DNA of 64,000 nt, taken from positions 124,001 through 188,000 of the forward strand of contig JBLDXI010000050.1 of NCBI GenBank assembly GCA_047495785.1, read 5' to 3'. The stretch is from Lepidodermella squamata. Taxonomy: Eukaryota; Animalia; Gastrotricha. Numbering within the stretch: the stretch's first letter is position 1; every line of letters starts with the position of its first letter. The notes beneath the pieces were generated by a model. The model made no database searches. It had not been told where the DNA came from and saw only the letters and a program-made list of their open reading frames with translations. A program made the position numbers and the translations under genes. Shown here piece by piece: positions 1,765 to 55,985 of this stretch.

Positions 1765-2934
1765 ATGGCATCCCTTATAATTTTGCTTTTGGTGGTTGAG
1801 CTGGCGTCTGTAGAAGCTGCGTCATCAGCAGCTGGGAAGTTTGAGGCGAGATTCGCTGAATCCTGTCCAGCAGTTCTGTCAAAAAGTCTACCGATGGATC
1901 AAGCGGTTTACACCAACAACAGCCGTCCGATTGTCGTGAATATCAAAATGCTTCTCCATCATTTCGTCGGTATCGATGACGTGGAGCAAAAGCTGTCTCT
2001 TCTTGCGCAGCTGTCTATGCATTGGGCGTTGCCATGCGAAACTCCGGATTGCACAGATTTATTACCTGAACCAGAGTGCAATATGCCCTACCGTGATGAC
2101 TTATATTTCAAGGTTCCCGCTTTGGATATATGGACGCCGGAGATTTATCATTTTACAGCATTTCATTCGCCTTTTTTTGGTCGCAGAAACATTGATCAGG
2201 TCTGGATCTATCCATTTTATCCACGTGAAGTAAATTATATCGTGTTTGACCGGTTCGATGTTTCCTGCACAGATTTCAGTTACAGAAAATTCCCGTTCGA
2301 CACCCAAGCCTGCTCTTTAGTTTTCGAATCAGCTGATGCTAACAGGGACGTGGCGCTGTACCTTCAAAAATTTGAAATCGACACAGCTGCGCGCAACTCC
2401 TTCATCGTGGACTCGGATATATGGTCTCTTGTGGAGCCCCTTGAGAATGTCAGCAAACCATCCTCGCATGGAAGCGGCACGTTCGTTGTTGACCAAGTAA
2501 ATTTGACAATGAGATTCCGGCGCAAAAGTGGCTACTACGTCTGTAACATTTTCGTCCCAACTATCACACTTTTTGTTCTTCAAGTGGTTTCTTTGATTGC
2601 CGAGTCTGTAAATAGAGATCAATCAGCGTTTTGCGTGACTGTCGTGCTTTCCTATGTGGTATTTCTCACCTTGATTTTTGGCATGATTCCGACAACTTCA
2701 GACCATGTATACCTTGTGTACATGGTCGCAGCTAAATTTATCGTGGCAGTCATGATCACGGCTTACACTTGTTTGAGTCCTAGTATTTCTCAGTCTCTAA
2801 AATCTCGTGTTGTCGAGTTACACAAATCGCTGACTATACCAATGCATCGGTTTATGGACCTGGGGATTGTTGGAGCGGCAGGCCTTATTGTAATTATTAT
2901 TGATGCTGTTCTTTTCTCCCTCATGCTATCTTGA
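1765..2934 (+). CDS. Divergent Cys-loop ligand-gated ion channel subunit (nAChR-like, non-alpha), intronless
   Basis: Signal peptide, IWTP motif, Cys-loop CTDFSYRKFPFDTQAC, RRKSGYY before M1, four TM helices, PTTSD M2-M3 loop. Confidence 0.92.
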   Translation: MASLIILLLVVELASVEAASSAAGKFEARFAESCPAVLSKSLPMDQAVYTNNSRPIVVNIKMLLHHFVGIDDVEQKLSLLAQLSMHWALPCETPDCTDLLPEPECNMPYRDDLYFKVPALDIWTPEIYHFTAFHSPFFGRRNIDQVWIYPFYPREVNYIVFDRFDVSCTDFSYRKFPFDTQACSLVFESADANRDVALYLQKFEIDTAARNSFIVDSDIWSLVEPLENVSKPSSHGSGTFVVDQVNLTMRFRRKSGYYVCNIFVPTITLFVLQVVSLIAESVNRDQSAFCVTVVLSYVVFLTLIFGMIPTTSDHVYLVYMVAAKFIVAVMITAYTCLSPSISQSLKSRVVELHKSLTIPMHRFMDLGIVGAAGLIVIIIDAVLFSLMLS

Positions 2935-3203
2935 ACTCTCAAATTCTCATCCCAATTTCTAATTTTCAGTAATTTTTATCACTGAGCTTTCAATCACTCA
3001 CGTGGCGCCAGTGCCCCATGGTTGGTATAATTTATTTAATGTGAACGACTAGGTATCTATTAAATAAAGTACCTGAGGAAATTTAAGTTGTGTATGTCCT
3101 TTTAGGCAAAAGAAAATCGAGTTATTCAAGGCTGCTTTCGTAGTGCAGGGAAAGCAACCACGTATCCAAACTCGAGGATCTTATTTCGTTGTTCTATTGA
3201 CAG

Positions 3204-3430
3204 GAACATTTCATGGTATCACCATAGTCGAGAAGGAATGCATGCCAGTCACACCTGAGGCTTATAACGGGTGTAAGACGCGGGCCACTGTAACCATCCC
3301 GATCCTCGATTGCAAATGCAACGATCGAGATTACTGCAACAGCTCCCCAAAGGCGAATTCTGCTGTTTCAGCGCTCATACTCGCATTTATCTGGTTTTTG
3401 TTAGAGATTTTGATCAGTGATCAAGCTTGA
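3204..3430 (+). CDS. Terminal exon of a Ly6/uPAR (three-finger, quiver/lynx-like) GPI-anchored protein; upstream exons not identified
   Basis: Acceptor cag at 3201-3203, then ...KEC...GC...CKCNDRDYCN followed by small residues (SS..ANSA) and a hydrophobic tail typical of a GPI signal. Confidence 0.6.
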
Positions 3431-3708
3431 TATTTGAACAATATATCCGAGCTGTAACCTTCCTGTTCTGTTATGCGTTTATTTTTTGCTCGTTACAGTA
3501 ATTTTTGGCAAAGAACAAAGAAGAAGCGTGTCTTCTTTCAAACAGCACACATGTCAACAAATAAACGTAGAGTAAAAATACTTTATTCAACAGCTTGTTT
3601 ATGACCTCTTTGTTCTCAGTTAAGCACAGTACTCGTAGCATACAACACATAGTATAATGACCGGCACGCATGAAAGCACTGGAATTGGCTCGTTATTGTT
3701 ACAATGAA

Positions 3709-4491
3709 TCACCACCACGTTTTTGGATAAGTCCTCTTCATTACTAAATTATTGAAAATCCAAGCAACAATGACCATAACAATCGCACCACAAGCGATAG
3801 GGAGGACTACGAAGATGAAAGCAGTGCCGTCTCGAGGTATCGGGCTGAAAGTTGCCCCGACAAGGGCTGTCGCGCCACCCGGGGGATGCGTCGTCCCAGT
3901 CAGTCGCATCGCAGCAACAGCTAGAGCCACTGATAACGGGGTGGCGACTAACGGGTAGTCGTAGAGCGCCAATCGGACGCAAATGCCGAGAATCGCGCTG
4001 ATAACATGCCCGCCTACAACGTTTCTCGGTTGGGCCAAGGGCGAGTCGTAAGCGTCGTAGGTCAGGACTGAAGTCGCTCCGAATGAGAAGGCAACGAATG
4101 CTAGTGGCAGGTTATCATGTGCCTTCGGGTCGTAGTACTTGTAGATCAACTCGTATTGGAACAACGCGACAACTAGCATTCCGATGAAGGAGATAAGGAA
4201 AGAAGCTAGGGCGTGAAGGAACAGGTTCTTCGCCTCCTCTGGGCTGCAGCATTCACATTTTTTCGCCGGAGGTTTCGCGGGGGCTTGAGACGTTCCAGGG
4301 GCGACCAAAGGAATGGCTTGATTCACCGGTTCGCCAGGCTTCAGCTGAGGCTTCCCAACAAGTTTCCTGAAGTAGTTGATAAAGTAGAGCTCGACAGGAT
4401 TTTGCCGTTGTTGCTTTCGTTGTGGTTTAGGCTCTTCAGCCATTTTCGACTCGAAAGTGGTGATGGTTGCGATTTCGCAGCCGTCGGCCAT
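3709..4491 (-). CDS. HPP-family integral membrane protein (nitrite-transporter-like), intronless
   Basis: Family motifs SFGATSVL, SPLAQPRNVVGGH and THPPGGATAL, C-terminal YPKTWW. The start is likely 4491 or 4443; the ORF track start is 4593. Confidence 0.9.
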   Translation of the reverse strand: MADGCEIATITTFESKMAEEPKPQRKQQRQNPVELYFINYFRKLVGKPQLKPGEPVNQAIPLVAPGTSQAPAKPPAKKCECCSPEEAKNLFLHALASFLISFIGMLVVALFQYELIYKYYDPKAHDNLPLAFVAFSFGATSVLTYDAYDSPLAQPRNVVGGHVISAILGICVRLALYDYPLVATPLSVALAVAAMRLTGTTHPPGGATALVGATFSPIPRDGTAFIFVVLPIACGAIVMVIVAWIFNNLVMKRTYPKTWW

Positions 4492-6109
4492 TTTTATACC
4501 CGGCGCTTTGTCGGAGTAGCAGCAGTGTGATGGCGGTGGTGAGAGAAAAACACTACGAGTTGGCTTGCCACCACTGTGGCGCACAGGCGGCATTTTTTGA
4601 AAAAAAATCGCCTATTCAATATTTTATGAGTTGTGCGTGTTAAATTATCATTGGCGCAGATGATATTTTACCGAAAGATCGCTATCTATAATACAGCGTT
4701 ATAGGGAGCTAGGCAGAACTCACGAATTTTAATTATCTAGATAGCGATCTCAGGTCGCGAATGACGTGCGTCAGAATATGGCCATGAAATTGAAGATAGC
4801 TGCTTACATTCGTTCAGCCTTGGTGAAATATCAGAAGCGAGAGCTATTCTGATGTTATAGAATACAGTTTTCGAAATCTAATAGCTGCACCCAAGGCTTT
4901 GTATTTTTACAAATGACTTTTGATAGCGGAACCTTTAAATAAGGACTATACAAGGTGCTTCATAATTCGTAATTTGCAAATTTTCGGAAAATGGAGATCT
5001 CAAGTGTTACACAATGATCAAGGGCGAGATTTTCTTAGCATTAATTCAATTAATCCAATAAGGTAATGTAAAAATACAGAAATACAATTAATTTATGGAA
5101 ATTTTAACTCAGAATTCTGGAATTTTGTTTATCGTATTTCCTAGAAAAGTGTGCCAAAGAAATTTAAAAAGTAAGTAAAATTTATGAGCTTTTCCTAACA
5201 GTGAAAGAGACATTTCAAGTAAATTAATGACAATATGCCAAAAACGATGAATAGGAACATATCTGTAGTGCCTGCACTGACCATATTGTAATAATGTTTA
5301 ATATTAAAGCTTGATATGTTTTTGAAAAAAATAGTCCTAAGTGCTGTAGTGTGTAAAATAATGAATGAGCTGTCGCGTGCTGGTTTCATTTTTTTCCGGA
5401 GTATTCTTTAGTTTGCTTCCTGCTTCAAAATACTACATAACTGAGTCACTACTATTAGGCTTGTGATCGAAAGAAAATTTCAAACTTTGAGTTTCAAAAA
5501 TAATAGAATGGGTTATCCTAGTGGGTCAATATTTCTCCCACACATAGCTCTTAGGTATGGCTAACACCAGGTAAAATTGGGTTATTATCCGATCGTTGAT
5601 TGCTGCGTAAAAGAATTCGCAAACTTACGCTATTCCTTCGATCAGAACCCTAAATTATACTGGATTTGTTGGTTTCCTTTGCGATAGTTTCGAGTCAGGT
5701 GGACAGAAACCATTGACCAGCATGTAATTCAATATTCAACCCTTGCCTAGCAGAATTCGTCAATTTTATCATGAAAAAGTAGCCCATTTAATCATAAAGG
5801 ATGCTTCGCGAACCCGTATGGTTTTCTCAATATTGCAGTCTCATTTTTTATCAAATTTTTCAAATTCGAATAAATAACGTGTGTTCTGCCTCGAAATTGT
5901 GCAGTAGACAGCAGAAGAATCGGAGCGACAGTTGCGCTTCTAGCTAAATCGATAGAATGATGTATGAATGACGCTCACCCATTCTTACCAGTGCATTGGC
6001 TGAGCTTATCAAATATTCCGCATTCAATCGAATGTAGTCTACATCGATTTCACGGGTAATATAACCAGTTGCCGCTTTTACGCCTTACGGAGAAACGTTA
6101 TTGGAAAAC

Positions 6110-6585
6110 ATGAATCAAACAACATTATCCTCGAGTTCAAACTCGACAGAAACAACGACCAACAAACGGCCATTTTTCTACCAATTTGAAAATGTAAGCC
6201 TTTTCAAGCGATGAATAACTCAACAGCCACATTTTCTTTGCGTTTCCAGACCGACTTTATAGGACACTGGGAATTCTCAGGCCCTGTAATAAGCGGCACC
6301 CTAATTGTCGTATCTCTATGCATTGGCATTACAGCCTTGGTCATATGGAAGTCGAACCAAGCGGACGAGCAAAGGAGGGCAACTACGGCACAACGGACGG
6401 ATACTGAAGCCAACGTGACTATAGTACAACCTTTATTGCCAGCAATTTCTTCAACAATAACAACGGAAGATACCCATCCGACAGAGACGACAAACTCCCC
6501 CGGGGCGAGTTGTGTTGTAGCAACGGAACAACTAAGTTCAATTAAGGAGACAATTTATAGAGGGGAAGGAACGAGCAACGAATAA
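6110..6585 (+). CDS. Small single-pass membrane protein (2 exons: 6110-6193, 6250-6585)
   Basis: ATG 6110, GTAAG donor at 6194, TTCCAG acceptor at 6249, phase 0. Ser/Thr-rich N-terminus with N-glycosylation sequons, one TM (VISGTLIVVSLCIGITALVIW), Thr-rich tail. Confidence 0.6.
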
Positions 6586-9043: not shown

Positions 9044-9640
9044 GATGTTAGCGAGGTGTGGCTTTGTTTGAAAGACTTGTTTTCTAAAAAAGCTACCGAT
9101 GCGCGTTTTTTAGCCTTATCATAGAACAAACATTCTTTTATCACAGGAAGAGATATTGCTTAATGAAGAGATAACGTCATTGCGGCTTTTTTTATCGAGA
9201 AAATTCTAAATTTCCATTTTTTAGGTTAATTTTTTCATGAAATTCATTTTTTTCTTCGCCATGGTAGAAATCTTATTATTCAACTTGTTTGCTATTAGGA
9301 AAATTCATTTGAAATTTATATAAAATTATTCATGCCTTAAAGTTGAAAATGAATCATCTTATTTTTTTTTATGAATTTCGAAAAATTGGTGATAGATGCA
9401 CCAATTTCTATGCCTATTTCAAACTAAAGTGAGCCATTACGCAAATTTATTTGGATACGTAACTTATCTCTGCGTGACTCTTTAAACCAGACATCGTGTG
9501 ACTCGAATTTATCTGAGGGCAAGAAGATACCCCCTTACTTCTTATCAGCAGGCAACTACGCAGTGCGCATTGCTTACTTAGATGATAACAACTGGTACGG
9601 AGCGGCCCGAAATTTACCAAGTGTTCTTATTTTACCCAAA

Positions 9641-14438
<4,798 letters not shown>

Positions 14439-18315: not shown

Positions 18316-19736
18316 ATGAGGAACGCATCGAATCAGTTTCTTCAGATTCTGTATGGAGTTTCCATATTTATCTTCCTAGTCGCTGCGATTCCAAACAGCC
18401 AGAGCATGAACAAGGTACTTAAATTTGACGTGTCTCCTACGATTAAATTGAATTCTCCCAGATTTTCATTGAAGCAGTGAAAACAGGCAACATCACCCTG
18501 GTAGGAGAGCTTCTCGCTCAAAATAAATCCCTGGCTAACGCTCGATTCACTGATTTACCCCCGTTGAACGGATATGAACGACCCCCTTTCGATCGGCTTA
18601 TCGAAAACGCTCCAGCTATAGAAATCGCGGCTATTTACAACCAAAGCTACGAATTGGCCAAGATGTTACTTGAGAATGGCGCTCGAGTTGATGTGAAGGA
18701 TGACGGATTCTTGAGTGAAGGAAAAACGGCCTTACACTGGGCGGTCGTGAACGGGAGAGCTGACCTTGTCGAGCTTTTCATCAAATATAACGCCAGTGTC
18801 ACTTCTAAAGACAAAGAGGGCCAAGACGCCCTGTTTCTAGCTGTTGACTCCGTAAATCTCGACCTGGCCAAGTTCCTTTTGGCAAAGGGGGCGAAAATCG
18901 GTACAACAAACAAAAATAACGAGAGTTTAGTCTTCCTATCAGCTTCGAGGTGTAACTTGGAAATGGTACAGTACTTTCTATCGCAAAATCTTTCAGCTGA
19001 TGCTGAATCGTTATGGAAATGGCGGCCGATCTGCTTTTGCCTCTGGAATTCAAATGTGACCCAGCTGTTACTATCAAAAGGCGCCAAAGTGACGGGTGTT
19101 TGCGGAAATAAGCCTTTCATGATTCATTTGGTTGACCATTACAGCAACTGGAATATTCCAGTAGATGCAATCCGAATTTTGATCGAGAATGGCGCCAATG
19201 TTAACGCTTTATCACAATGGGGCGATTCTGTGTTGCAACAAGCTGTTTCTGATACTGACGTTGAGGTCGTTCGGCTTTTGATTGAAAATGGCGCGAAAAT
19301 GATTGTAGACAAAAATGGCTATTCAATATCGCTGAAAACTGCCTTAGATCAGCGAAATTTAACAATATCTCTCGACATTTTAAATTACTTGTCGGCGAAA
19401 GGCGACGCAATTGATGGAAAGTTGCGGAATAACGATACATTCCTATCGATGGTACTCAAGAAGAGAAATGTCATGTTGCCCTTTGTAAAGTTTGCCGTCG
19501 AAAAGGGCAAGGCGAATGTGAATAAGACGGATTCGGATGGCCGCAACTCTTTGCACCTGGCGGTTTTGAATTCATGGGCACCAACAGATGATAAATTGGG
19601 AACAGTAAAATATTTGGTCTCAAAGGGAGTGAATCGCAATGCGAAGGACAAACGCGGAAAAGCTGCTCTGCAATACGTCCAGGAGAGCCCAAATAATGCC
19701 GACCGACAGGATATCATCAATCTGCTGAGGTCTTGA
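18316..19736 (+). CDS. Signal-peptide-bearing ankyrin-repeat protein, copy 1 (exons 18316-18414, 18462-19736)
   Basis: Exon 1 reads MRNASNQFLQILYGVSIFIFLVAAIP..., followed by a phase-0 intron. About 10 ANK repeats (GKTALHWAV, GRNSLHLAV, LLENGA.VD). Confidence 0.9.
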
Positions 19737-23221: not shown

Positions 23222-24640
23222 ATGAGGATCTTATCCAACCAGTTTTTTCTGAGACTCTATGGAATTTGTATGCTAAGCTTCTTTATCGCTGCACTGCCAG
23301 AGAAGCAGGACGACATTAAGGTACCTAGATTTTCAAAATTTAGAGATTAGGGCTCCATGCTCCATAATTTACGATTTTCATAGATTTTCTTCGAAGCTGT
23401 GAGAAATGGCAGCACACCAGTGGTAAAAGATCTTCTCGCTAAGAATAATTCGCTGGCTAATGCTCGGCAACCGCCTCCTCTCCTGTGGCCAGTAGACGAG
23501 CGATACGAAAACGCCCCTGCACTAGAAGTCGCTGTTGCCTTCGACCAAAGCTACGAATTAGTTAAGCTGTTACTTGACAATGGAGCTGACGTGAATGCGA
23601 AAGATGATGGTTATCAGAGAACACCTTTACTCTGGGCAGTTGTGAATGACAGAATAGATCTTGTCGAGCTACTTATCGAAAATAATGCCACCATCAGCGA
23701 TAGGGAAGTAATTGATGACGATGATGCCCTGTTACTGGCGGTGGATCAAGATAATCTCAACATTACCAAGTACTTGGTGTCGAAAGGGGCCGATGTTAGA
23801 ACGAAAAACTTCTTTAACCTGACTTTACTCGATTCCGCGGCTAATGAATGCAGCTTTGAAATGCTGCAGTATTTGCTGTCGCAAAACTTGACAGCGAACG
23901 ACAATAATTGGCCAGAAGGAGCTTGGCGGCCGATTTGCAATTGCCTGTCCTATGCAGATGTAACTCGGCTGTTACTGTCAAATGGCGCAAACGTGAATGG
24001 TAAATGCAGTGAAGAACCTCTCATCTGCACCGCGGTGCATTGTCATCGGGATTCAGTTGCCGCCACTATTCGAGTTTTGATGGACAACGGCGCAGATGTT
24101 AATGCTGTTTCGAAAAATGGCGATTCTGTGCTGCAGCTAGCTGTTTCTGAAGCTAACGCTGATATCGTTAAGCTTCTGATTGAAAATGGCGCTAATATGA
24201 TTGTGGACAAAAATGGCTATTCCCTATCGCTTAGAGCTGCCTTGGATCAGATGAACGTAACATCGTCTCTCGAGATCTTAAATTATTTGTTGGAAAAAGG
24301 TGACGCGATCGATGGCAGGTTGGGAAATAACGACACGTTCCTATCGACGGTGCTCAAGAAGAGCAGAAACCAAGTCCTGCCGGTAGTCAAGTTTGCTGTG
24401 GAAAAGGCCAATGCGAATATTAACGCGACAGATTCAGATGGACGCAACGCTTTGCATCTGGCGGTTTTGATGAACACGTGGACAAGCTATACTAAATCGG
24501 ATACTGTCGAATACTTAGTCTCCAAAGGGGCGAATCGCAATGCAGAGGACAAACTTGGTAAAACGGCCCTGCAGTACGCCCAGGAGATCGAATTTCCCCC
24601 TGAACGATATCAAATCTCGAAAATATTGTCACACTATTGA
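23222..24640 (+). CDS. Signal-peptide-bearing ankyrin-repeat protein, copy 2 (exons 23222-23320, 23384-24640)
   Basis: Exon 1 reads MRILSNQFFLRLYGICMLSFFIAALPEKQDDIK. Same intron position and phase as copy 1, with colinear ANK repeats. Confidence 0.9.
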
Positions 24641-25587: not shown

Positions 25588-27049
25588 ATGGGAAAGTTAT
25601 CCTATCGGTTTTTGCTGGGCCTGTTTGGAATTTTCGTGCTAAGCTTCCTTATAGCTGCACTACAGGAGAATCAGGACGACAACTGGGTATCTATTTTTCT
25701 AATCTTTAAAAATCAGAAATCAGAAATTCATTAGATTTTCTGGGAAGCCGTGGGAAGTGACAACATCAGCCTGGTAAAAGATCTTCTCGCAAAAAATGAA
25801 ACGCTTGCCAAAGCTCGATTACCGGAGTTACATCGAAACGCCTGGGGCATTGAGCCTCTAGAAATGGCATACCAAAACGCCCCGTTTATAGAAGTCGCTG
25901 CTATTTACAACCGAAGCTACGAACTGGCTAAGCTGTTACTTGACAATGGCGCTGAAGTGGATGCGAGAGATTATGGCGAGTTTGGGAGAACGGCCTTACA
26001 CTGGGCGGCCGTTAGACGGAGGCTAGATATTGCCGAGCTACTCGTCGAAAATAAAGCTAACATCACTGTGAAGGACAAACAAGGAGGCGACGATGCCCTG
26101 TTACTGGCTGTTGCTTCTGGAAATTTCAACCTGGTCAAGTACCTTGTGTCGAAAGGGGCCGATATCAACACATCAGACAACAATAACTACGGTGTGGTGG
26201 ATCGCGCAGCTGGTGCATGCAGCTTAGAAATGCTGCAGTATTTTCTATCGCAAAATCTCTCAGCTGATGGCACGAGAGGAAATGGGTCCGAAGGAACATT
26301 GTGGCCGATCTGCAAATGCCTTTGGAATCCGAATATCACTGGGCTTTTAATGTCGAGTGGCGCCAAAGTACCTCGTCTATGTGCTCATCAACCTCTTCTG
26401 CTGCACATGGTTTATAATTACGAGAGAAACTTTGACTCTATTCCCGTTGAAACGTTTCGAACTATGATCGACATGGGTGCAGATGTTAACGCTGTTCCAT
26501 ATGGCGGTTCTGTCTTGCAGGAAGCTGTTTCTTTTACTAATAAAGACATCGTCCAGCTTTTGGTTGAAAGAGGCGCTAAAATGACTGTGGACGAAGATGG
26601 TTATTCCCTATCACTGAGAGCTGCCTTGCGTTCGAAAAACACAGCTGCAGCTTTCCAGATCGTGAATTACCTACTAGAAAATGGCGATGCGATCGACGGA
26701 AAGTTGAATAATAGCGAAACGTTCCTATCGATGGTACTCAAGAAAGGAAACGGCCCTTTGCTGTCGTTTGTCTGGTTTGCCGTCGAAAAGGGCAAAGGGC
26801 AAGGCGGATGTTAACGCGACGGATTCCGATGGCCGAAACGCTTTGCATCTAGCCGTTTGTTTTTTCTCCTGGTATGACAACTTGGATACTGTCAGATATT
26901 TGGTCTCCAAGGGGGTGAATCACAATGCGAAGGACAAATTCGGCAAAACAGCTCTGAACTATGTCATGGAGAATCCTTATTTTCCGCATCAACAGGATGT
27001 GATCAAAGTGCTGTCAACTATGACTTCGCGACACTACATTGAATCTTGA
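25588..27049 (+). pseudogene. Ankyrin-repeat copy 3, frameshifted near the C-terminus (exons 25588-25686, 25735-27049)
   Basis: A 7-nt duplication (AAAGGGC) at ~26787-26800 relative to paralogues shifts the last two repeats into ORF 26768-27049. It could be a truncated allele or an assembly error. Confidence 0.8.
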
Positions 27050-28075: not shown

Positions 28076-30109
28076 TTAAATTTCAATCATTTTTTGTACA
28101 TAATATGCGTCCACGAAAGCAGTTACAATAACGACCAAACTCGCAGCGCAAACATCCGCAACTCTGACATACTCAACCGATTTTTGATTTTCTATTCTGT
28201 GTAACGACACAGTGAACGTAATGAACTCATAAAAGCAAATTAAAAGCCCCATGGTAAATTTGAAAGAGATGATGCTGACGAGGTAAACAGTCTCTGAAGT
28301 CTTGGGTATGTTCTCGAACACCAATGACAGCATAACAGCAAACGATAAAACCAAAGCGACGCTGATACCAGGTCGATCCGGTACCTCCGGCGGTAAGACC
28401 AGTGTTGTAGTTTGAAGTATGTACAGCGAGATAACTGGGAGAAACAAATATGTGACGTAGTATTCAGCTCGACGTTTGAATGTGACCGGGAAATACAACC
28501 GGCTAGATTCTAGCTCTGTGTAATCAATACGCGTCTTACCACGGCCCACGAATGTCCAGAGATCTGTGTCGCCGATGAATGTCAGCCTAGACGACGATTC
28601 AAGTTCGAAATTGGTGATATTGTATGTTGCGTAATCAACGACTTCCTCGCTTGCAAAGACGATATTGCACTCGAGAACATCGAATGGGAACTTGGCGAAG
28701 GAAAATTCAGCGCACACTGTGTCCAAGCGAGTTGTCACCCAAATCGACGAGATGCCATCGTCAGTGAATGGCCAAGTTATTACTTTTTTGTCAGGATCGC
28801 TGGGAAGATAATACATTTAAAACTATGCATGTAGTCCTATATAGGGCTTCAATATTGAAATTTCACATTTTTGAAGTTAACAATATTTTCATTTTTCTCG
28901 GGGCAGTTATGACTCGATGACATTTGACCGTTAATAGCAAGTAAAATTGGGGTTTGGCAGTGCGAGAAGTAGGATCCTCGAACTAGGGGGTATTTTCGGG
29001 CCCAAATTTTATGACCAAAGGGTCCCCCTGTGGGTTTTTGAGGGAATTTTCCCCTTCGGCCTCGGCCTTGAGATGGGTAAATCGAGTACGGAGAGTTCAG
29101 ATATGAACGATTTACGAATGTTACACCGTAAAATATCGAATTGGCCAAGCTACTCGACCTATATTTTTGAGGACAATTCTATATTTTATACAATATCCGG
29201 GTGGATATCATAGGTGGATAGCACGATGGATATCAGCCTGAAGGATGAATATCCATCGCTGTCCACCGATGGCACCCGGATATGGTGTTATCGGGCGTCA
29301 AAATCATCAAATCCGGATAAACGAGTAAATTATGCTAATTTTAATGAAATGCGCGCTTAAAGAATTTAGTTATTTAATGTATCATAATCATATGATGATA
29401 ATAGTGCAAACTAATTCCCCACGCAATAAATTCTGATCTCATTTTCTTGTGCACACTCGAAATTATTTAGGGTAATCTGAGGTGAGGAATCTCGCTAGAT
29501 ATTCAAAAATGTTGTTGGGGTCAAGCTAGTGTCTCTACGACAACCTGAGCAAATAACATTATTCACTTGTTAGTGGTCATTTTTCAAATTATCAAGAATA
29601 ACCTGAATATCGGTGGAGATGTTCTCAGCGGGTTGACTTGAATGAGCGATGGGATCCAGCGATGAATCCCCAGCTTCACTACCGTCAGCTGTTCCAACTT
29701 TTGTGTCTCTATTAGATCTCTGCACAGTGTCTCGTTTTGAATTAGGTCTTCGCAGCTCGCGACTGGACAAGTTGATCGCCAAGATGCCGTAATTGACACC
29801 AGCAGGGACAAGCTATAAGATTAGACATTTTGTGATATTTTATGAATGATGGCAAAACTATGCTCTAATTATATACCTTTGATCAAGGTCATCGATAGCC
29901 AAGAACTGAAAGAGGCTGAAGGTTATTTGCACCTCAAGAGGTTGATTGCGGTAGATTATCCAATAGTTAGGTAAATCTGGGGCTGAAGCTTCTGGGCAGA
30001 ACTGATCGTAAGCTTTCCCTATTGAAACCTTGGATAGCTCTGGAGCTTCCAAAGCGTCGGAAACGCAGATAAATTTAAGAATGATCAGAAGTAGCGCTCT
30101 CCCTTTCAT
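28076..30109 (-). CDS. Divergent Cys-loop ligand-gated ion channel subunit, 3 exons (30109-29877, 29812-29603, 28799-28076)
   Basis: Two phase-2 GT-AG introns join in frame. Signal peptide, WIP, Cys-loop CAEFSFAKFPFDVLEC, KRRAEYY, 4 TM. Confidence 0.85.
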
Positions 30110-30948: not shown

Positions 30949-32803
30949 GATGCGAGAGATTTAATTTGATTTGATTTACAGGGTCTGATGATTTGATTTG
31001 ATTTGATTGATTGATTTGATTTGGTGGGGATTTGGGGAATTTATTTAAAAGGACCCGTGATTTACTGAAGAAATCAAATCAAATCTAATCTAATCACTGG
31101 CAATGGTGCTGTGAAAAGTGGATGTGAACAATTATTGCGAATTTCAAAGATGCTAGGATGCTAGGATGCTATATCTTGCTACAGTAGTAAATTGTTCAGA
31201 TTCCTCGCCTGTAATACGGCGGCCATAGATCGATCCCCAGCCAAAAAGTGATTTTTCATTTCTTCTTCTCTATTTTCTCTCATTTGAATATGCACACATC
31301 GAATGAATCAAAACACATGAATTCACAGGGCGTGAAATAACGTGCATGTGTTTGATGCCTTCTCAAAAAAGCATGAAAAGGCTACGCACAGGGAGCGAAG
31401 TACAGGGTGCTGGGTTCCATAGGGCTCAGATTACATAGAACATAGAGCGTCTGTAAGCTCGCTAATGTTACCAAAAACCGCAAATTAATGGATTATTTTT
31501 TCCTGTGAAGCCTTTATACCATAAATATAAACCGCAGGCTGACCTTATCAAAACGTTTCTCCGTGAGCCGGTAACTTTTGGTCGCTGACTGGAGCATTCG
31601 AAAAAGTATAAATGTCGTGGTTTTCTTTCGGGCAGTACGGTTTTTAAATGCATAGTTCAATACTGAACATCGGTGGGCACCTGCCCTCTTGTGATCAAAG
31701 AAAGTCCATAAAGAAAATAAAAGTGGACACGCAGGATCCATCAAATCCCACAGCCTTCACAATTTTTTATTTTTGTTGTCTGAAATTATTTTCCTTGAAT
31801 TTGAGATTTCCGAACAAAGAAAAACAAATTGGCGTAAAAGCAGCCGAACAAGTCAGTGCAATTCGATTTTACCCCTTTCTTCGGCGAGAATTTCCCCTTC
31901 TAAGGCTAAGGAAAGTCGATGGCCGTTATGATTGAGTTGACTGTGCGGGCCGATTGAACTAGGGGAGAGATGATCCCTAGCGGTACTTCGCTCTCTGGAA
32001 CGATGCGCTTCAGCAAGGGAAGCGTTAACAGCGCAGCGATAATTCGTCAGGCGCGTTAGCCGGTCGCCAAATTGTGAAATTGTGATATCGTCGAGTAGCG
32101 AAAATGGGACGTCCAGCAAGGTTTCACGCCCCGCAGATTCTCTCGAAACCTTTCGGGACGATAATTTTGTCCATTTGCCTCGCACCTTGCACCTTGCGCC
32201 TTGCACCTTGTTTGAGCTTGAATGACAAGTGATGATTTGAAGATTGGTAAGCCGAGCGGTTATTGCGAAACCAACTGGAATTCTATGGTCAGATCAGTAC
32301 ATTGTAAATCTCACCTGGGTTCTGAGCTGGAAGAATTCGTCGGCGTGAGTGCTTCCACCGGTTCGACGGACTTCGCAGCATTCGACAGGGCTCGTCGGAT
32401 GCGTCGCTAGACCGAAGCGGTACACGGGCCCGCTCGGTTGCCTGACATAACCGTAATCCATACCGACTTGATCCCAGAACCGCTGGAGAACGATAGCCGG
32501 GCGTCCAGTTTCCACAAAAATGTAATGGAGGAAAACGACTCGACTGACAAACTAAATTGTTGTTATTAAATCTTTTTTGGGGTTAAAATAGTGCACTTGT
32601 TAACAACTGAAGGGCGAGGCGCGAGACGGCACGCGTCAAACCGGTGACGTCTTGCTGCGCACTACAATTGTTTGCAACATGTTGTACCAATCTGGCGGGC
32701 CACACATTGCTACAAGCTAAGCCTTTATAAGCGAAGCAATCAGAGCTAAAGTCTATCATTCCTCACTTGAATTTCTTAAAGTTACTTGAATTTTCCATTC
32801 TTT

Positions 32804-33849
32804 ATGGAGCCGCTCAACTTGTCGATCTCAGCCATCAACCATCAGCCGCCTGTCATTCAGCCCGTCTCTCAACCGTCCATGCCCCAACCAGCCTCCAGTC
32901 GAATCAACAATCCACCTCGTTTGAAAGCCGATGGAAAAAGACCGGGTCCAAGAAAAGTGAGACTTTGCTTTTTGGTCATTAAATTTGTTTATATTGTAAT
33001 CCTTGTTTAGTGAACAGACGTCGGAACTGGTCTACGGAGGAACTGCGGGAATTAGATGCCTTTATCGAATACTGCGAAGACCTAGTGCCGCCCGCCAAGC
33101 CGTCGCAGGCCACCTTTCGTCGATGGCTGGAATATTGTGAGGAAAATAGCAGAAATTGGATGCTCAATTTTCCGAATCGACGGCAGAGCGCGGTGCTATT
33201 CAAGGCACGGGGAGTGGTCCGAAAGCGAGCAATGGGCTGTGCCTCGTCTCCACAGCCAGCAGTCCAACCAGCTCCTCCGATGCAGCAACCAAGGTCAAAT
33301 CAATTGGTGTTATCATCAACCGTCAACCATCAGCCGCCTGTCTCTCAGCCGTGTGTGTCCCAGCCTGCCTCAAGCCGAATCAACAATCCACCTCGTTTGA
33401 TAGCCGATGAAAGGGAGACCGAGTCCAAGAAAAGTGAGACTTCGCTTTTTTGGTTCAATTTGTTTATTGTAATCCTTTTAGTGAGGAATTGGTCGAAGGC
33501 GGAACTGCGCGCGTTGGACGCATTAATTGAATACTGCCAAGACCTAGTGCCGCCCGCCAAGCCGTCGAAGATCACTTTTCAGGGATGGCTGAAATATTGC
33601 GAGGAGAATAACAGCAACTGGTTGCTCAATTTTCCAAATTGCCGGGAGAGCGCGGTGCTATTCAAGGCGAGGGAAGTGGTCCGAGAGCGAGCAATGGGCA
33701 GGGCTTCGGCTCCACAGCCAGCAGTCCCACCAGTTCCACCGATGCAGCAACAGGTGTGGTATCAACAGGTGTGGCAGCCCCAGCCGCTGTTTTGGCAATT
33801 GGCTCAGCAACCGTTTTATCCGATCAATTGCGGGCGAATGGAAAACTGA
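32804..33849 (+). CDS. Internally duplicated Myb/SANT-like protein with P/Q-rich linkers; possibly TE-derived or degenerate
   Basis: Two ~490-bp units, each with an equivalent GTGAG...TTTAG intron and the domain RNWS..EL..LDA.IEYC.DLVPPAKPS..TF..WL.YCEEN...FPN...SAVLFKAR. Unit 1 lacks 1 nt relative to unit 2 near 32940. Confidence 0.5.
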
Positions 33850-34972
33850 CTGTGACATTTCATTTAGTCTGAAGTTTTTTCTATTTCTGCGATCTCGTGG
33901 CTGCTTTGAAAATATTGATTTCGGATTCAATTATAAAAAAAAATAGTTTTTTGTGAACCTTCTACTTCCATAACACAATTATAAAACAAAATAAAATGCA
34001 ATCTTAGAAAACAATGGGGAACGGTGTCTTTTTGGCATATCAATTATGAGCTTATTCCTCATTGCATTGGCAGATACCGATTACGGCGTTGACAACGATG
34101 ACTCGATGATAATAAATATACCTCAAGAATATCCGGGATGGCCGTTTTTACCTCCACAGAGCCGAGGGAAGAAAGGGGATAAAATGACTTACAGTAACCA
34201 GCTTTTCTTAGCTAAAAACGTGTTTAGTACACTCAGAGCCGTTTCCTGTTTCATAATTTCGTGTATTTTTGAAAACTGTGTTTGAAACTGGTTTAGGACA
34301 TCACTCATTAGCAATTTGGCTTTTGAAATTCTATCCGCCTTTAACATTCCGAAAAGTATTTATATTGTATAGGATTTAAGTAAATATTTTGTTGAAGCAA
34401 ACCAAGCTGACGTAAACACCACGTGATTCTCTGTAGGTATGCTATTTATCCAAACACAATAATAATGTCTCTCTGGCTATCATTCATTTCTTTTATTCAT
34501 CATTCATTAGAAAACTCAACCCGTGTATATGTTTTTTACACGCCCGCTTTAACACTGACACATTTTTTAAAGCTATTTTAAAAAGTGGGATTTCGTATAG
34601 TAATAGCTTATCCTTACGTATTTTTCTTTATAGAGAGCATTATTACCTTGACAAGTTTTTTCTGCATGAACGGCATCAATGTCGAACCTTAAAAAAAATA
34701 GGAGAAATAATCTTCTCTCGAAAAACCTTCATTTGTTAAGGAAAAGTTTCACCATTGTGTTTAATCCGAATTTTGCTGTCCGTAATCAGTGCATAGCATC
34801 AACGGCCCAAAACACTTCGGTTTCTCCTTGCAAAATCAAAAGTTAAAAATTATACTCCAATGTATTGTTTTACCATTGTTACATCCTCAAGCCTGCGACC
34901 TCGGATATTCGGAGCTTGTCTCGATTATCTCCAAAACACAGTAGTATAATCCATCCATTATCCATCTGTTAG

Positions 34973-36422
34973 ATGAATAACTTTTTACACCGGTTTTTGC
35001 TGAGCCTTCTCGGAACCGCCATGCTGCTTTTCCTTATCGCTGCATTGCCAGAGCAGCAGGAAGAGGTATTTAACTTTCAAAATTTGACGATAAGAGCGCT
35101 GAAATTCACGATTGTCATAGCTTTTCTTCAGAGCTGTGAATACTGGTTATACCTTCGAAGTCAAAGACCTTCTCGCTAAGAACAAATCGTTGATCAAGGC
35201 TAGGCATACTGGTCCGCGTCTTTTTCAAATCCTTTTCGAAGAGCATTTTGGCAATGCCACCGCATTAGAAATCGCTGTTGTTTACAACCGAAGCTTTGCA
35301 TTGGCTAAGCTTTTGCTTGACAGTGGAGCTGAGGTGGATGCGAAAGATTACGGACGATACAGTTATGAAAGAACGGCCTTAATCTGGGCGGCCTATTGGG
35401 GGAGGCTAGATCTTGCCTCGCTGCTCATCGAAAATAAAGCTAACATCAGTGTGAAGGACAAAATGGGTGACGATGCCCTGTTACTGGCGGTTCAATCTCG
35501 AAATTTAAACCTGGTCAAGTACCTTTTGTCTAAAGGGGCCGATATCAACACATCAAACAACGATAACTACGGTGTTGTGGATCGGGCAGCCGACGGATGC
35601 AGCTTAGAAGTATTACAGTATTTTCTTTCGCAAAATCTTTCAGCTGATGGCTCGAGAGTTATTGGGTCTGGGAGAACACTGTGGCCCATCTGCAAATGCC
35701 TTTGGAATTCGAATATCACACAGCTTTTACTTTCAAATGGCGCTACATTTCCTGTTCTCTGCCTTGATGTGCCTTTTCTGATCCATATGGCTAATAGCTA
35801 CGAGACTTGGGATGGAGAATTCAGAGAATTCAGGTATATTCCTACTACATCGTATCAAACTATGATCGACCTTGGCGCAGACGTTAACGCTGTTTCAGAT
35901 GGCTTATCAGTCTTACAGGTAGCTGTTACTCGTTCTAATAAAGACATCGTCCAGCTTTTGATTGAACGAGGCGCGAAGATGACGGTAGACAAAAATGGCT
36001 ATTCCCTATCGCTGAGAGCTGCCTTGCGTACTTGGAAACCAAACGCATCTATCGAGATCTTGGATTACTTGCTGGAAAAAGGTGACGCGATCGATGGAAA
36101 CTTGAATAATAGCGAAACGTTCCTATCGATGGTGCTCAAAAACAGAACCGGCTTCGTGCTACCGGTTGTCAAGTTCGCTGTCGAAAAGGGCAATGCGAAT
36201 GGTAACGCGACGGATTCTGTTGGACGAAACGCTTTGCATCTAGCTGTTTTGATGAACAGTTTGACAGTCATCGATAAATTGGATACTGTTAGATATTTGG
36301 TCTTAAAGGGAGTGAATCGCAACGCTAAGGACAACCTTGGAAAAACGGCCCTGCAGCACGCCCATGAGATAAGTCGACCAGATGATCGCCAGGCTTCAAT
36401 GAAAATACTCACATACTATTGA
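34973..36422 (+). CDS. Signal-peptide-bearing ankyrin-repeat protein, copy 4 (exons 34973-35065, 35121-36422)
   Basis: Exon 1 reads MNNFLHRFLLSLLGTAMLLFLIAALPEQQEE. Phase-0 intron, colinear ANK repeats. Confidence 0.9.
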
Positions 36423-43131: not shown

Positions 43132-44270
43132 TCACTTTGGTTCCCATTGGCTCTCCAATTTCGATAGCAACAGTGAAATCTTGCGTGTCCAACCAGGTCT
43201 GAGCATTTGCACGCAAGCTCCTACGGTAGCATGCAAATTGACGCAAACAACGCCCATCTTTTGCAACCAGCTCGAGGCATGGTGCGGCCCAAAATCGGTG
43301 TAGAATAATTTGAAGACGACTGCGAAAAGCGCGGGTGCGTATGAGGCGCAATATATGAAAAAAACTACGACAGACTGCTGAGCGAAGAAAATGTCACGAT
43401 CTCGCCATCTCTCCACCTTGAACGATCGACCCCGATGTCGAGTACTCACGCTGTTATCACTAGCCTTTAGCCTTCATTTGCAAATTTCGGATACATCGAA
43501 AAATCATGTAGTAATTTTTGGCTAATAAAGATACTGGAATCGTGACGCTGGTACAACAGTAACAATAGAAAACTTGAATCAAGATCACCAATCAGCCTAT
43601 ATTGGAAAGCACTGCAGATCCAACCTGGATTGCCATCGTTCAACCCTTCAATCTCAATAAGTTCATTCCGCCAGATTCCGACGAAGAAACAAATGGCAAT
43701 ACAACAGCAGTAGAGGCCAATAACCCATGACAGGAGACGTTTCGTACTGGCTTCGTAATTTGGGCTGTTTGAAAGGATGCAGAGACGGCGCTCGTATGAA
43801 ATCATCGCGTTCATATAAGTTCCAAAGGCCCCATTAGCGTATTGTATCCAAAATAAGGCAGTGCATGTCCACTGATCAGCTTCCCAGTAGCCTGTTCTAA
43901 AATTTATCGCAAGACCGAGACAACAGATGAAAGCTAAAACAATATTCCTAGCACCGTCAATCGCGATTAGCATAAGAAGACCACGTTTTACTTGCCGCTT
44001 GTACAAATCGACGCAGCTAACGATTGTTACTACGGTTACTAAGACCAGGCTGATCGCAAACATCAGCAAATGAATGAGACGGCCGTTCATTGTGACGTAG
44101 TCGAGGTCATGGAACCAGCCGATGAAATGGGGTCTCGGGTTATCATAGCCCGAGCCAGGCAAGTAAACCTCGATCCAGCCTCCGTTGATCAGCCGTGCTC
44201 TCAGATACGACGAGTTTCCATGCTGCGTTGTTTCATTGCTCTGCAATAAATTTGACGTATTGCTGTTCAT
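43132..44270 (-). pseudogene. Rhodopsin-class GPCR, copy 1, frameshifted
   Basis: N-terminal sequons, TM3 Cys, ISYERR (DRY equivalent) and TM6 YAP. Relative to copy 2 there is a 5-nt deletion at ~43550 and a 7-nt duplication at ~43461-43474. Confidence 0.85.
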
Positions 44271-54818: not shown

Positions 54819-55985
54819 TTAAGATAACATTAGCGAGAAAAGAACTGCATCGATGACCATCACAATGAGGCCTGCCGTTATGGCGAGTACGATATCCAGA
54901 AGGCGATTGAGTGGAAATGTTAAAAATTTATGCAATTTGACAACTTTGGTTTTCACAGAATCCGGGATACTCGGGCTCAAGCAGGTATAGGCCGTAATTA
55001 TGACAGCTATAACAAATTTAGCTGCCACCATATAGACAAGGTAGACGTGGTCTGAAGTTTTTGGCATCATGCCAAAAATTAAGGTGAGAAGTACAACGTA
55101 AGACAGCACGACAGTCACGCAGAATGCTGATTGGTCCCTGTTCACTGGCTCTGCTATCAAGGAAACGACTTGAAGGACGAACAGCGATATAGTCGGGACG
55201 AAGATGTTGTAGACGTAGTAGCCGCTTTTGCGGCGAAAAATGATCGTCATGTTAATATGGTTAACGCCAGATAAGGCTAATGTCGGCAGAGGTGCATAGC
55301 TGGTGCCCTCAAGTGGCTCTACAACCGACCATATATCAGTATCCACGATGAATGACTGAACTGTCTCGTCGATTTCAAACGACTTGAGATAAATTGATAC
55401 CTCTCTCATGACATTTGCGGATTCAAAAACCAACGAGCAGGCTTGCGTATCGAAGGGAAATTTGCGGTAGCTGAAAGCAGTGCAGGATACGTCGAATCGG
55501 TCGAAAACGACGTAACTCATCGAATCCGATTGGAAAGGATAGACCCAGACCAGGTCAGTGAATTTGCGACCGACAACAGGTGATTCGTAAGCTGTCAAGT
55601 GAGAGATCCCCGGCGTCCAAATTTCCAATGCTGGAATAAGAAAGTGCAAATCGCCAGGGTAGCTTATCTTACATTCTGCTGCCGATAGTAAATCTGTGCA
55701 CTTCGGGATTTCGCATGGCAGTGTCCAAGACATCTGCAGATTAGCGAGTAATGACAGCTTTTGCGCCACGTCGTCGATTCCAACAAAGCGATGAAGATAC
55801 ATTGTCATTATCACGACAACCGGACGGGTGTTGTTCGAATAAATTGCTTGATCGGTGGGTAGGCACTTTGAACGAACTGCTGGACAGATTTCAGTGAATT
55901 TTGCCTCCAGCTTACCAGCCCCAGACAGAACCGCTTCCATCGACGCGAACCTAACGACTATCAGCAAAACAGAAAACGAGTTCAT
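54819..55985 (-). CDS. Divergent Cys-loop ligand-gated ion channel subunit, intronless paralogue
   Basis: Colinear with 1765-2934. CTAFSYRKFPFDTQAC, 4 TM. Confidence 0.92.
   Translation of the reverse strand: MNSFSVLLIVVRFASMEAVLSGAGKLEAKFTEICPAVRSKCLPTDQAIYSNNTRPVVVIMTMYLHRFVGIDDVAQKLSLLANLQMSWTLPCEIPKCTDLLSAAECKISYPGDLHFLIPALEIWTPGISHLTAYESPVVGRKFTDLVWVYPFQSDSMSYVVFDRFDVSCTAFSYRKFPFDTQACSLVFESANVMREVSIYLKSFEIDETVQSFIVDTDIWSVVEPLEGTSYAPLPTLALSGVNHINMTIIFRRKSGYYVYNIFVPTISLFVLQVVSLIAEPVNRDQSAFCVTVVLSYVVLLTLIFGMMPKTSDHVYLVYMVAAKFVIAVIITAYTCLSPSIPDSVKTKVVKLHKFLTFPLNRLLDIVLAITAGLIVMVIDAVLFSLMLS

What the first reader, a model, noticed from the sequence alone, without database searches (positions are those of the whole stretch)
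3709..4491. Intronless HPP-family transporter embedded among animal genes: horizontal transfer candidate
Seen: complete HPP motifs in a single exon, flanked by unmistakably metazoan genes, so it is not simple contamination at contig level. Established: characterised HPP proteins are cyanobacterial and plastid-envelope nitrite transporters, and the family is typical of bacteria, plants, algae, fungi and protists rather than model animals. Inference: an acquired nitrite or anion transporter. This would be especially notable if the host carries algal symbionts or lives in low-oxygen sediment.
Basis: partly seen in the sequence, partly recalled or inferred. Interest (0 to 1): 0.72.

Follow-up and report, generated by a model that had tools for sequence, protein, structure and literature searches.

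The report
HPP anion-transporter gene in an animal genome
An intact, single-exon gene for an HPP-family membrane transporter (the family of plant and cyanobacterial nitrite transporters) sits among animal-type genes; it is rare in animals, but it looks like an old, fully domesticated eukaryote-type gene, and recent bacterial transfer is not shown.

Summary
An uninterrupted ORF at 3709-4593 (-) matches Pfam TM_HPP at E=1e-41. It keeps 30 of 31 family-conserved positions and folds confidently as a helical membrane protein. It lies in gap-free sequence among Cys-loop receptor, C-type lectin, trypsin, rhodopsin-type GPCR and ankyrin genes, and near a gene with 50-60 bp GT-AG introns. The contig is therefore eukaryotic and almost certainly metazoan; the phylum is unknown.

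The HGT interpretation is only partly supported. No protein in about 15 billion is more than 50% identical. The nearest relatives are two unnamed single-exon genes on gene-poor eukaryotic contigs from SRA assemblies.

In the ML tree these three fall in a clade (97/96) whose named members are all eukaryotes: bdelloid rotifers, dictyostelids and green algae. Bacteroidota and Desulfobacterota lie outside it. Inside, the clade is a polytomy. AU tests reject neither a union with rotifers (p=0.29) nor one with Bacteroidota (p=0.12).

Codon usage and tetranucleotide make-up match the host, so any transfer is old. Old eukaryote-to-animal transfer is my preferred reading. Patchy vertical retention is not excluded. 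Nitrite or small-anion transport is inferred from family membership only.

The parts
3709..4443 (-). Preferred coding sequence of the HPP protein: Met51 of the long ORF, 244 aa plus stop codon.
   Evidence: ORF; sequence. ATG 4443-4441 has the context aaaATGg and is the first ATG downstream of the TATAAAA box. AlphaFold model of the 244 aa: pLDDT 87.2, pTM 0.81.
4444..4593 (-). In-frame upstream extension of the ORF (Met1, Met35). It is probably promoter and 5' UTR rather than coding, and it holds TATAAAA at 4492-4498.
   Evidence: Read. No homologue aligns to this part. That this is a promoter is inference.
3724..4218 (-). TM_HPP domain (PF04982): five long hydrophobic helices plus one short helix after the HPP motif.
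   Evidence: Pfam E=1e-41; hydropathy; helices 68-103, 112-130, 139-159, 164-182, 187-198 and 206-231 in the model.
3862..3888 (-). Signature motif HPPGGATAL that names the family.
   Evidence: H186 and P188 are invariant, and P187, G189, G190, A191, A193 and L194 are >=90% conserved, in the 78-sequence alignment.
4357..4398 (-). N-terminal helix VELYFINYFRKLVG (residues 16-29). It is separated from TM1 by a Pro/Ala/Lys-rich linker of low model confidence.
   Evidence: pLDDT 91-94. Among 363 fetched HPP proteins, the YF[IVL][NDE]YF core is shared only with two dictyostelid-type proteins, P0011 and P0278.
3582..3587 (-). AATAAA polyadenylation-type signal, about 120 nt after the stop codon.
   Evidence: Read. 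That it functions as a signal is inference.
1765..2934 (+). Context: convergent neighbour, a single-exon Cys-loop (nAChR/5-HT3-type) receptor-like gene. Its stop lies 775 bp from the HPP stop.
9563..14198 (+). Context: multi-exon PEP-synthase-like gene (PPDK_N domain) with 50-60 bp GT-AG introns. It shows that the contig is a spliceosomal eukaryote.

Best explanation
This is a functional, host-integrated gene for a small HPP-family membrane protein: an N-terminal amphipathic helix, a flexible linker, five long membrane helices and one short one. By homology it most likely conducts nitrite or a similar small anion across a membrane, as shown for Arabidopsis NITR2;1/2;2 and cyanobacterial HPP proteins. 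It belongs to a eukaryote-type branch of the family. Together with two unnamed genes from other eukaryotic (probably invertebrate) genomes it forms a small, deeply diverged subgroup. The most likely history is an old acquisition by the host lineage from another eukaryote (alga or amoebozoan type), followed by full adaptation to the host genome. It is not a recent bacterial transfer and not contamination.

Shown: gene integrity, family membership, linkage to animal-type genes, host-like composition, and lack of close relatives.
Inferred: substrate, direction of transport, membrane location, and the transfer itself.
For: Family membership and integrity.

Linkage to animal-type, intron-bearing genes in N-free sequence.

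No close kin: the exhaustive search of 1.84 billion representatives gave 3376 hits, none above 50% identity. A profile word search with the three-member subgroup recovered only P0142 at 380 bits, the next hit scoring 187 bits (P0127, also in the query alignment, was not listed), and no named animal orthologue.

Phylogeny: the careful IQ-TREE (96 rows, 187 columns) has a 97/96 split that puts the window with P0127 and P0142 (89/88), Adineta, dictyostelids, Chlorokybus and Chlamydomonas, apart from Bacteroidota and Desulfobacterota. FastTree and the quick tree agree.

Where context could be read, members of that clade are eukaryotic: a UQ_con neighbour on L004, transcript-like contigs for P0124, and a spliced Adineta vaga gene.

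Signatures: the N-terminal YFINYF motif is shared only with dictyostelid-type proteins. The loop after the HPP motif is of the eukaryote-clade type; none of 38 clade members has the HxLG form that 12 of 56 outgroup rows carry.

Old residence: the codon-usage fit is +0.032 against a host range of -0.033 to +0.049, and the tetranucleotide z-score is <=1.24. GC3 of the three subgroup genes tracks their own genomes: 0.57, 0.35 and 0.43.

Function of the family: PMC10605003, citing Maeda et al. 2014.
Against: - The inside of the eukaryote-type clade is a polytomy, so no donor can be named.
- AU tests do not reject placing the subgroup with Bacteroidota (p=0.118, dlnL 15.3) or with the rotifer clade (p=0.287). 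With 187 columns the signal is weak.
- Identity to the best bacterial proteins (up to about 47%) is close to identity to the best eukaryotic ones (48%).
- The host is unidentified, so 'absent from relatives' is untested.
- Only the best 120-150 hits of each search were visible, so more distant animal HPPs may exist.
- There are no expression data and no transport assay.
- No solved structure resembles the model, so the mechanism rests on family annotation.
Confidence: 0.5

Rival explanations
1. Vertical retention. HPP was present in the ancestor of animals, as it is in amoebozoans, plants and other eukaryotes. It survived in a few invertebrate lineages (this host, the hosts of P0127 and P0142, rotifers) and was lost elsewhere.
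For: The gene falls in an all-eukaryote clade. Monophyly with the rotifer clade is not rejected (p=0.287). The N-terminal motif is shared with dictyostelids, which are fellow Amorphea. Composition is fully host-like. The three subgroup members are 36-43% identical, so the subgroup is old.
Against: It needs very many independent losses. No named holozoan, fungal or other animal protein appeared among the best hits of three searches. The rotifer clade and this subgroup are not sisters in any tree. Bdelloid rotifers are well known for acquiring foreign genes (from memory).
Confidence: 0.22
2. Direct bacterial-to-animal transfer, for example from Bacteroidota or Desulfobacterota. These dominate similarity lists.
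For: Most word-search hits are Bacteroidota at 40-47% identity. The AU test does not reject a union with Bacteroidota (p=0.118). The gene has a single exon.
Against: The ML trees place it across a 97/96 split from all named bacteria. The N-terminal extension, the linker and the loop signature are eukaryote-type. Bacteroidota proteins lack the terminal YPxxWW and carry a basic tail instead. Lack of introns is uninformative in this genome. There is no compositional anomaly.
Confidence: 0.12
3. Assembly chimera or contaminant. The HPP segment comes from an associated microbe or protist and was joined to animal sequence by the assembler.
For: This cannot be excluded without reads. The gene's GC (0.526) is somewhat above that of its neighbours (0.44-0.50).
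Against: There are no N and no repeat or junction signature in 2900-6300. The tetranucleotide profile across 2501-6000 is within 1.3 sd of the window mean, and codon usage is host-like. TATA- and AATAAA-type signals are present. No near-identical microbial protein exists in 15 billion. The nearest relatives also sit on gene-poor eukaryotic contigs.
Confidence: 0.05
4. A decaying relic: the ORF is intact by chance but is no longer expressed or functional.
For: There are no expression data. The branch is long (0.83 changes per column), and one conserved position differs (G for A at 196).
Against: 244 codons are open with 30 of 31 conserved positions kept. The model is confident. A host-adapted sequence that still keeps these positions implies long purifying selection.
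Confidence: 0.05

Closest known systems
Arabidopsis AtNITR2;1 / AtNITR2;2 and cyanobacterial HPP nitrite transporters (Maeda et al. 2014, as summarised in PMC10605003)
   Same: Same Pfam family (PF04982), same HPPGGATAL core and same membrane-helix layout. Green-lineage HPP proteins (Chlamydomonas, Chlorokybus) share the 97/96 clade with the window protein.
   Different: The host is a heterotrophic animal without plastids or a known nitrite-assimilation pathway. Identity to green-lineage members is only 32-40%. The characterised proteins themselves were not available for comparison here. The substrate is untested.
HPP genes of bdelloid rotifers (Adineta vaga, A. ricciae, A. steineri; P0009, P0006, P0017)
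   Same: They are the only named animal HPP proteins seen. They have similar length (233-238 aa), an N-terminal extension and the C-terminal YPxFWW. They are chromosomal among eukaryotic genes and fall in the same eukaryote-type clade.
   Different: Identity is about 43%. They are not sister to the window gene in any tree, although monophyly is not rejected. The A. vaga gene is spliced, whereas this one has a single exon.
Unnamed genes P0127 (Logan SRR25018404, L002) and P0142 (Logan SRR12417985, L003)
   Same: They are the nearest relatives (89/88). Both are single-exon genes on gene-poor eukaryotic contigs. They share the R[LF]AL[YF]D[YF]P motif and the 'IPxG' loop.
   Different: Identity is only 43% and 36%. 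Their organisms are unknown, and their genome GC is 0.35 and 0.31 against 0.42 here. P0142 has HPPAG in place of HPPGG.
Dictyostelid HPP proteins (Dictyostelium purpureum P0278, Polysphondylium violaceum P0157, EukProt P0011)
   Same: Same clade. P0011 and P0278 share the near-identical N-terminal helix motif (VE[IL]YFINYF / YFIDYF), which is unique to these among 363 fetched proteins.
   Different: Identity is 35-47%, and no supported sister relationship is seen.
Bacterial HPP family proteins (Flavobacterium, Chitinophaga, Desulfobacterota and others)
   Same: The core domain is 38-47% identical, and all catalytic-looking motifs are shared.
   Different: They are short (about 178-205 aa) and lack the long N-terminal extension. 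They have a different loop (KIHxLG) and, in Bacteroidota, a different C-terminus. They lie on the other side of the 97/96 split.

Membership tests
HPP family (Pfam PF04982, TM_HPP) | Match to the family profile above the curated threshold | tested here: met
   142.6 bits against a cut-off of 27.2, E=1e-41, profile positions 7-157 of 157.
HPP family (Pfam PF04982, TM_HPP) | His-Pro-Pro motif and the other conserved positions (SFGA, QPRN, GGH, NN, YP..W) | tested here: met
   30 of 31 invariant or >=90%-conserved columns are kept. The only difference is G for A at position 196.
HPP family (Pfam PF04982, TM_HPP) | Integral membrane protein with several transmembrane helices | tested here: met
   Hydropathy peaks. 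AlphaFold model with pLDDT 87.2 and six helices in the domain.
HPP family (Pfam PF04982, TM_HPP) | Nitrite (anion) transport activity | not testable with these tools
   Known only for plant and cyanobacterial members. No solved structure is available for comparison.
Plastid/cyanobacterial NITR2-type nitrite transporters | Specific grouping with green-lineage or cyanobacterial members | tested here: inconclusive
   It shares the 39-row clade with Chlamydomonas and Chlorokybus, but the clade is a polytomy. No cyanobacterium was among the best 80 prokaryotic loci.
Plastid/cyanobacterial NITR2-type nitrite transporters | Plastid targeting or a nitrite-assimilation context | not tested
   No targeting predictor was run. 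No nitrite reductase or nitrate-assimilation domain was found among the window ORFs that were scanned.
Horizontally acquired gene in an animal | Physical linkage to bona fide host genes | tested here: met
   The sequence is continuous and N-free, with Cys-loop receptor, lectin, GPCR and intron-bearing genes on both sides. Read support is not testable.
Horizontally acquired gene in an animal | Supported nesting inside a donor clade | tested here: not met
   The position inside a eukaryote-type clade is unresolved. AU p=0.287 with rotifers and 0.118 with Bacteroidota.
Horizontally acquired gene in an animal | Absence from related animals | tested here: inconclusive
   The only named animal hits are the Adineta proteins. 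The rough alien index E-values is about 28 (Adineta 4.3e-33 against Thraustotheca 2.7e-45). The host is unidentified, and only the top 120-150 hits were visible.
Horizontally acquired gene in an animal | Foreign composition (expected only if the transfer is recent) | tested here: not met
   Codon usage and tetranucleotides are host-like. GC3 is 0.574 against 0.46-0.55 in the neighbours.

The most novel reading that the evidence does not exclude
The window gene, P0127 and P0142 define a previously unrecognised, animal-restricted HPP subfamily. On this reading, some compact-genome invertebrates have a dedicated nitrite or small-anion channel, acquired long ago from an alga or amoebozoan. It would be used for nitrite/NO handling in hypoxic or nitrite-rich habitats, or for nitrogen exchange with symbionts.
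Probability: 0.15. Interest if true: 0.6.

Novelty: new member of a known kind. Interest (0 to 1): 0.35.

Why it matters
Animals are not known to carry dedicated nitrite transporters of this family. A domesticated HPP gene would add a small, testable case to the list of non-animal membrane transporters recruited by invertebrates. It would also offer a handle on nitrite/NO physiology in the host.

The case shows the limits of the usual HGT cues. Here lack of introns and a bacteria-dominated hit list are misleading: the gene is eukaryote-type, old and compositionally native. The value is modest unless the host turns out to have a relevant ecology or the transport activity is shown.

Tried and rejected
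- Host identification failed. Exact look-up of ten window proteins found none in the collection. A word search with the flanking Cys-loop ORF found nothing at E<=1e-3. Rfam and tRNA scans of the window were empty. Further Pfam scans of 24 smaller ORFs gave only lectin and 7tm_1 hits.
- The SRA run ids of the nearest relatives do not occur in the paper library. Rfam on their contigs was empty. Neither DNA (blastn) nor any other window ORF matches those contigs.
- Two cluster look-ups named only 4 of 20 clade members.
- The first tree, on the word-search hits alone, gave a very long window branch and an unreliable pairing with P0003. It was superseded by the domain-trimmed trees.
- The C-terminal YPxxWW and the N-terminal Y..K..G were first taken as eukaryote-specific. 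This was rejected because deltaproteobacterial-type proteins have them too.
- Structure comparison with the PDB gave no match at E<=0.001.
- No flanking repeats or mobile-element remnants were found.
- Literature searches found no study of HPP genes in animals beyond one table entry for Longidorus.
- The metagenome scan and the viral collections were not used, since the exhaustive protein search already covered those sources.

Full report
**Observation.** The minus strand carries an uninterrupted ORF at 3709-4593 (294 aa).

Pfam TM_HPP (PF04982) matches at E=1e-41: 142.6 bits against a threshold of 27.2, over ORF residues 126-290 and nearly the whole profile. NCBIfam has no model that hits.

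A TATAAAA box at 4492-4498 abuts the ATG at 4491. The next ATG (4443, context aaaATGg) is therefore the more likely start, giving 244 aa. An AATAAA lies at 3582-3587. These signals are read from the sequence; their function is inferred.

Numbered from Met51, 30 of 31 invariant or nearly invariant columns of a 78-sequence family alignment are kept, including SFGA, QPRN, GGH, HPPGGATAL, NN and YP..W. AlphaFold2 with that alignment gives pLDDT 87.2 and pTM 0.81. The model has an N-terminal helix (16-29), a low-confidence Pro/Ala/Lys linker, and helices 68-103, 112-130, 139-159, 164-182, 187-198 and 206-231.

**Surroundings.** The window is gene-dense and holds many long single-exon ORFs.
- The convergent neighbour at 1765-2934(+) is a Cys-loop receptor with the canonical C-x14-C/FPFD loop. 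It scores 3e-12 on Pfam Neur_chan_LBD and about 4e-12 against PDB nAChR alpha7 and 5-HT3A. Three paralogues occur further on.
- There are also four ankyrin ORFs, a C-type lectin fragment, a trypsin fragment and rhodopsin-type GPCR-like ORFs.
- A PEP-synthase-like gene (PPDK_N) at about 9563-14198(+) is split by GT-AG introns of 50-60 bp. I scanned its exons one by one and did not build a joined model.

The window has no N. CpG o/e is 1.10. So the contig is a spliceosomal eukaryote and, from this gene set, almost certainly a eumetazoan with a compact, apparently unmethylated genome.

I could not name the phylum:
- none of ten window proteins is in the 15-billion-protein collection;
- the Cys-loop ORF has no word-search relative;
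- Rfam and tRNA scans are empty.

The sequence is not human-like.

**Relatives.**
- The word search gave 2386 hits but nothing near-identical. The best were a two-domain oomycete protein (Thraustotheca), three Adineta rotifer proteins (about 43%), two EukProt proteins and many Bacteroidota (40-47%).
- The claim rests on absence of relatives, so I ran the exhaustive search. It gave 3376 hits at E<=1e-3, none above 50% identity, and many proteins of eukaryotic length, including tandem double-HPP proteins.
- A profile word search with the window protein and its two nearest relatives returned P0142 at 380 bits, then dropped to 187 bits (P0127, itself part of the query alignment, was not listed). 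No named animal orthologue appeared. The named hits were Dictyostelium purpureum, Adineta, a colponemid and bacteria.
- The scan of one genome per prokaryotic species returned Bacteroidota, Desulfobacterota, Nitrospirota and others at 33-50%, all but one match (L035) over the membrane domain only, and no cyanobacterium among the best 80.

**Phylogeny.** I trimmed all proteins to HPP domains and split the double-domain proteins.
- FastTree on 188 domains put the window gene in a 40-row clade (95) with Adineta, a dictyostelid-like EukProt protein and others.
- Names obtained for that clade were Chlorokybus atmophyticus, Polysphondylium violaceum and Chlamydomonas schloesseri. The rest are unnamed Logan, JGI or ENA sequences.
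- A careful IQ-TREE run (LG+C20+F+G4 PMSF, 96 rows, 187 columns) recovers a 97/96 split. On one side are 39 rows: the window, P0127, P0142, the rotifer clade, dictyostelids, Chlorokybus and a 15-row green clade. On the other are 57 rows: Bacteroidota, deltaproteobacterial types, the oomycete clade, the colponemid clade and the double-HPP clade.
- The window groups with P0127 and P0142 at 89/88. The rest of the 39-row clade is a polytomy (the quick tree agrees).
- AU tests do not reject the trio plus rotifers (p=0.287). They also do not reject the trio plus Bacteroidota (dlnL 15.3, p=0.118).

The eukaryote-type placement is therefore favoured but not statistically secured, and no donor can be named.

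**Independent qualitative characters point the same way.**
- The N-terminal helix motif (VELYFINYF) recurs only in two dictyostelid-type proteins among 363 fetched HPP proteins.
- The loop after HPPGGATAL is of the clade's 'P..[WG]G-aromatic' type rather than the bacterial 'KIHxLG' type. None of 38 clade members has HxLG, against 12 of 56 outside.
- Bacteroidota proteins end in a basic tail instead of YPxxWW.
- Where context could be read, clade members are eukaryotic. L004 has a ubiquitin-conjugating-enzyme neighbour. P0124 sits on transcript-like contigs. The Adineta vaga gene is chromosomal and spliced.

**The nearest relatives.** P0127 (43% identity) and P0142 (36%) are single-exon genes on gene-poor, AT-rich contigs of 6.7 and 3.3 kb from SRA assemblies. 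They share the R[LF]AL[YF]D[YF]P motif and an 'IPxG' loop with the window protein. Their organisms are unknown.

The GC3 of the three genes (0.57, 0.35, 0.43) follows the GC of their own contigs (0.42, 0.35, 0.31). Each has evidently been resident in its genome for a long time.

**Composition.** Gene GC (0.526) and GC3 (0.574) are somewhat above the neighbours (0.44-0.50 and 0.46-0.55). However, synonymous-codon usage fits the pooled host genes as well as those genes fit each other (+0.032; range -0.033 to +0.049). The tetranucleotide profile of 2501-6000 lies within 1.3 sd of the window mean. No repeats or mobile-element remnants flank the gene. There is no sign of a recent insertion or a chimeric join, though reads are needed to prove the joins.

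**Mechanism.** Shown: the gene is an intact member of PF04982 with a confident all-helical membrane model. Established from the literature: the family's only characterised members, Arabidopsis NITR2;1/2;2 and cyanobacterial homologues, transport nitrite (PMC10605003 citing Maeda et al. 2014).

Inferred: this protein conducts nitrite or a similar small anion, with the conserved Arg (QPRN) and His (GGH, HPP) residues lining the path. The N-terminal helix and the Cys-rich linker (CECC) may anchor or regulate it. The PDB holds no similar fold, so structure adds nothing on mechanism.

An animal has no use for nitrite assimilation. Plausible roles are nitrite export or import linked to NO metabolism, tolerance of nitrite-rich or hypoxic habitats, or exchange with symbionts. 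All of these are speculative.

**History.** I rate the alternatives as follows:

| Explanation | Confidence |
|---|---|
| Old acquisition from another eukaryote | about 0.5 |
| Vertical retention with many losses | about 0.2 |
| Direct bacterial origin | about 0.1 |
| Artefact | about 0.05 |
| Non-functional relic | about 0.05 |

The rough alien index from the E-values is about 28 (Adineta 4.3e-33 against Thraustotheca 2.7e-45), which is indeterminate. It is not very meaningful, because the rotifer genes may themselves be acquired. A PF04982 domain is listed among HGT candidates of the nematode Longidorus elongatus (PMC5664137). HPP genes in animals are therefore rare but not unprecedented.

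**Verdict.** This is a real, probably functional HPP transporter gene in an animal genome: a new member of a known family in an unusual host. The HGT reading is only partly supported: the gene is old, eukaryote-type, of unresolved donor, and vertical retention is not excluded. Interest is moderate to low unless the host's ecology or a transport assay makes it more than a curiosity.

**Limits.**
- The host is unidentified.
- Most relatives are unnamed.
- Only the top 120-150 hits of each search could be seen.
- The alignment is short.
- There are no reads and no expression data.

Noticed in passing
window 1765-2934(+), 28076-28816(-), 54819-55985(-), 60183-61427(-): Four paralogous single-exon Cys-loop receptor-like ORFs with the canonical FPFD Cys-loop. 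They are so divergent that a word search of 5.8 billion proteins found no relative at E<=1e-3. This looks like a lineage-specific expansion.
   Followed up: partly
window 18477-19736, 23399-24640, 25750-26814, 35136-36422 (+): A tandem family of four single-exon ankyrin-repeat ORFs of about 350-430 aa with conserved N- and C-terminal parts.
   Followed up: no
window 9563-14198 (+): A PEP-synthase-like gene (PPDK_N, E=1.7e-66) with a 400-aa upstream ORF lacking any Pfam match and several 50-60 bp GT-AG introns. It is a bacterial-looking enzyme family in an animal context and is itself worth a phylogeny.
   Followed up: partly
window 33010-33849 (+), GC peak 32001-34000: This ORF has an internal duplication of a module of about 70 aa (NWS.EELR.LDA.IEYC..LVPPAKPS...). 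It sits in the GC-richest segment (0.486), which is also the strongest tetranucleotide outlier of the window. It has only a sub-threshold Pox_D5 hit.
   Followed up: no
window 43467-44270(-) and 62356-63533(-): Two paralogous GPCR-like genes with a weak 7tm_1 match. The second is split into two ORFs (62853-63533 and 62356-62844) by a stop, so it has either a short intron or is a pseudogene.
   Followed up: no
window 4485-4500 and 6167-6182: A 16-nt motif CGGCCATTTTT[A/C]TACC occurs at the HPP TATA/ATG and again about 30 nt upstream of the ATG of the ORF at 6211(+). The orientation relative to the gene is opposite in the two cases. It may be chance.
   Followed up: no
whole window: CpG observed/expected is 1.10 and introns are 50-60 bp. 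This suggests a compact genome without germline CpG methylation, which narrows the host to lineages such as nematodes, rotifers, tardigrades or similar.
   Followed up: partly
P0001, P0002, P0004, P0013, P0121, P0123, P0126, P0128, P0131, P0134, P0140, P0159: Many eukaryote-length relatives carry two HPP domains in tandem (an oomycete and unnamed metagenome proteins). The tree suggests duplications both within single proteins (for example P0134) and in shared ancestors of related proteins (for example P0121/P0122 and P0002/P0004/P0013).
   Followed up: partly
L088 6001-6770 (Adineta vaga CP075496.1): The rotifer HPP gene spans 770 bp for 238 aa, so it contains a short intron. It lies between CH-domain and dsRBD/MATH-domain genes.
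   Followed up: partly
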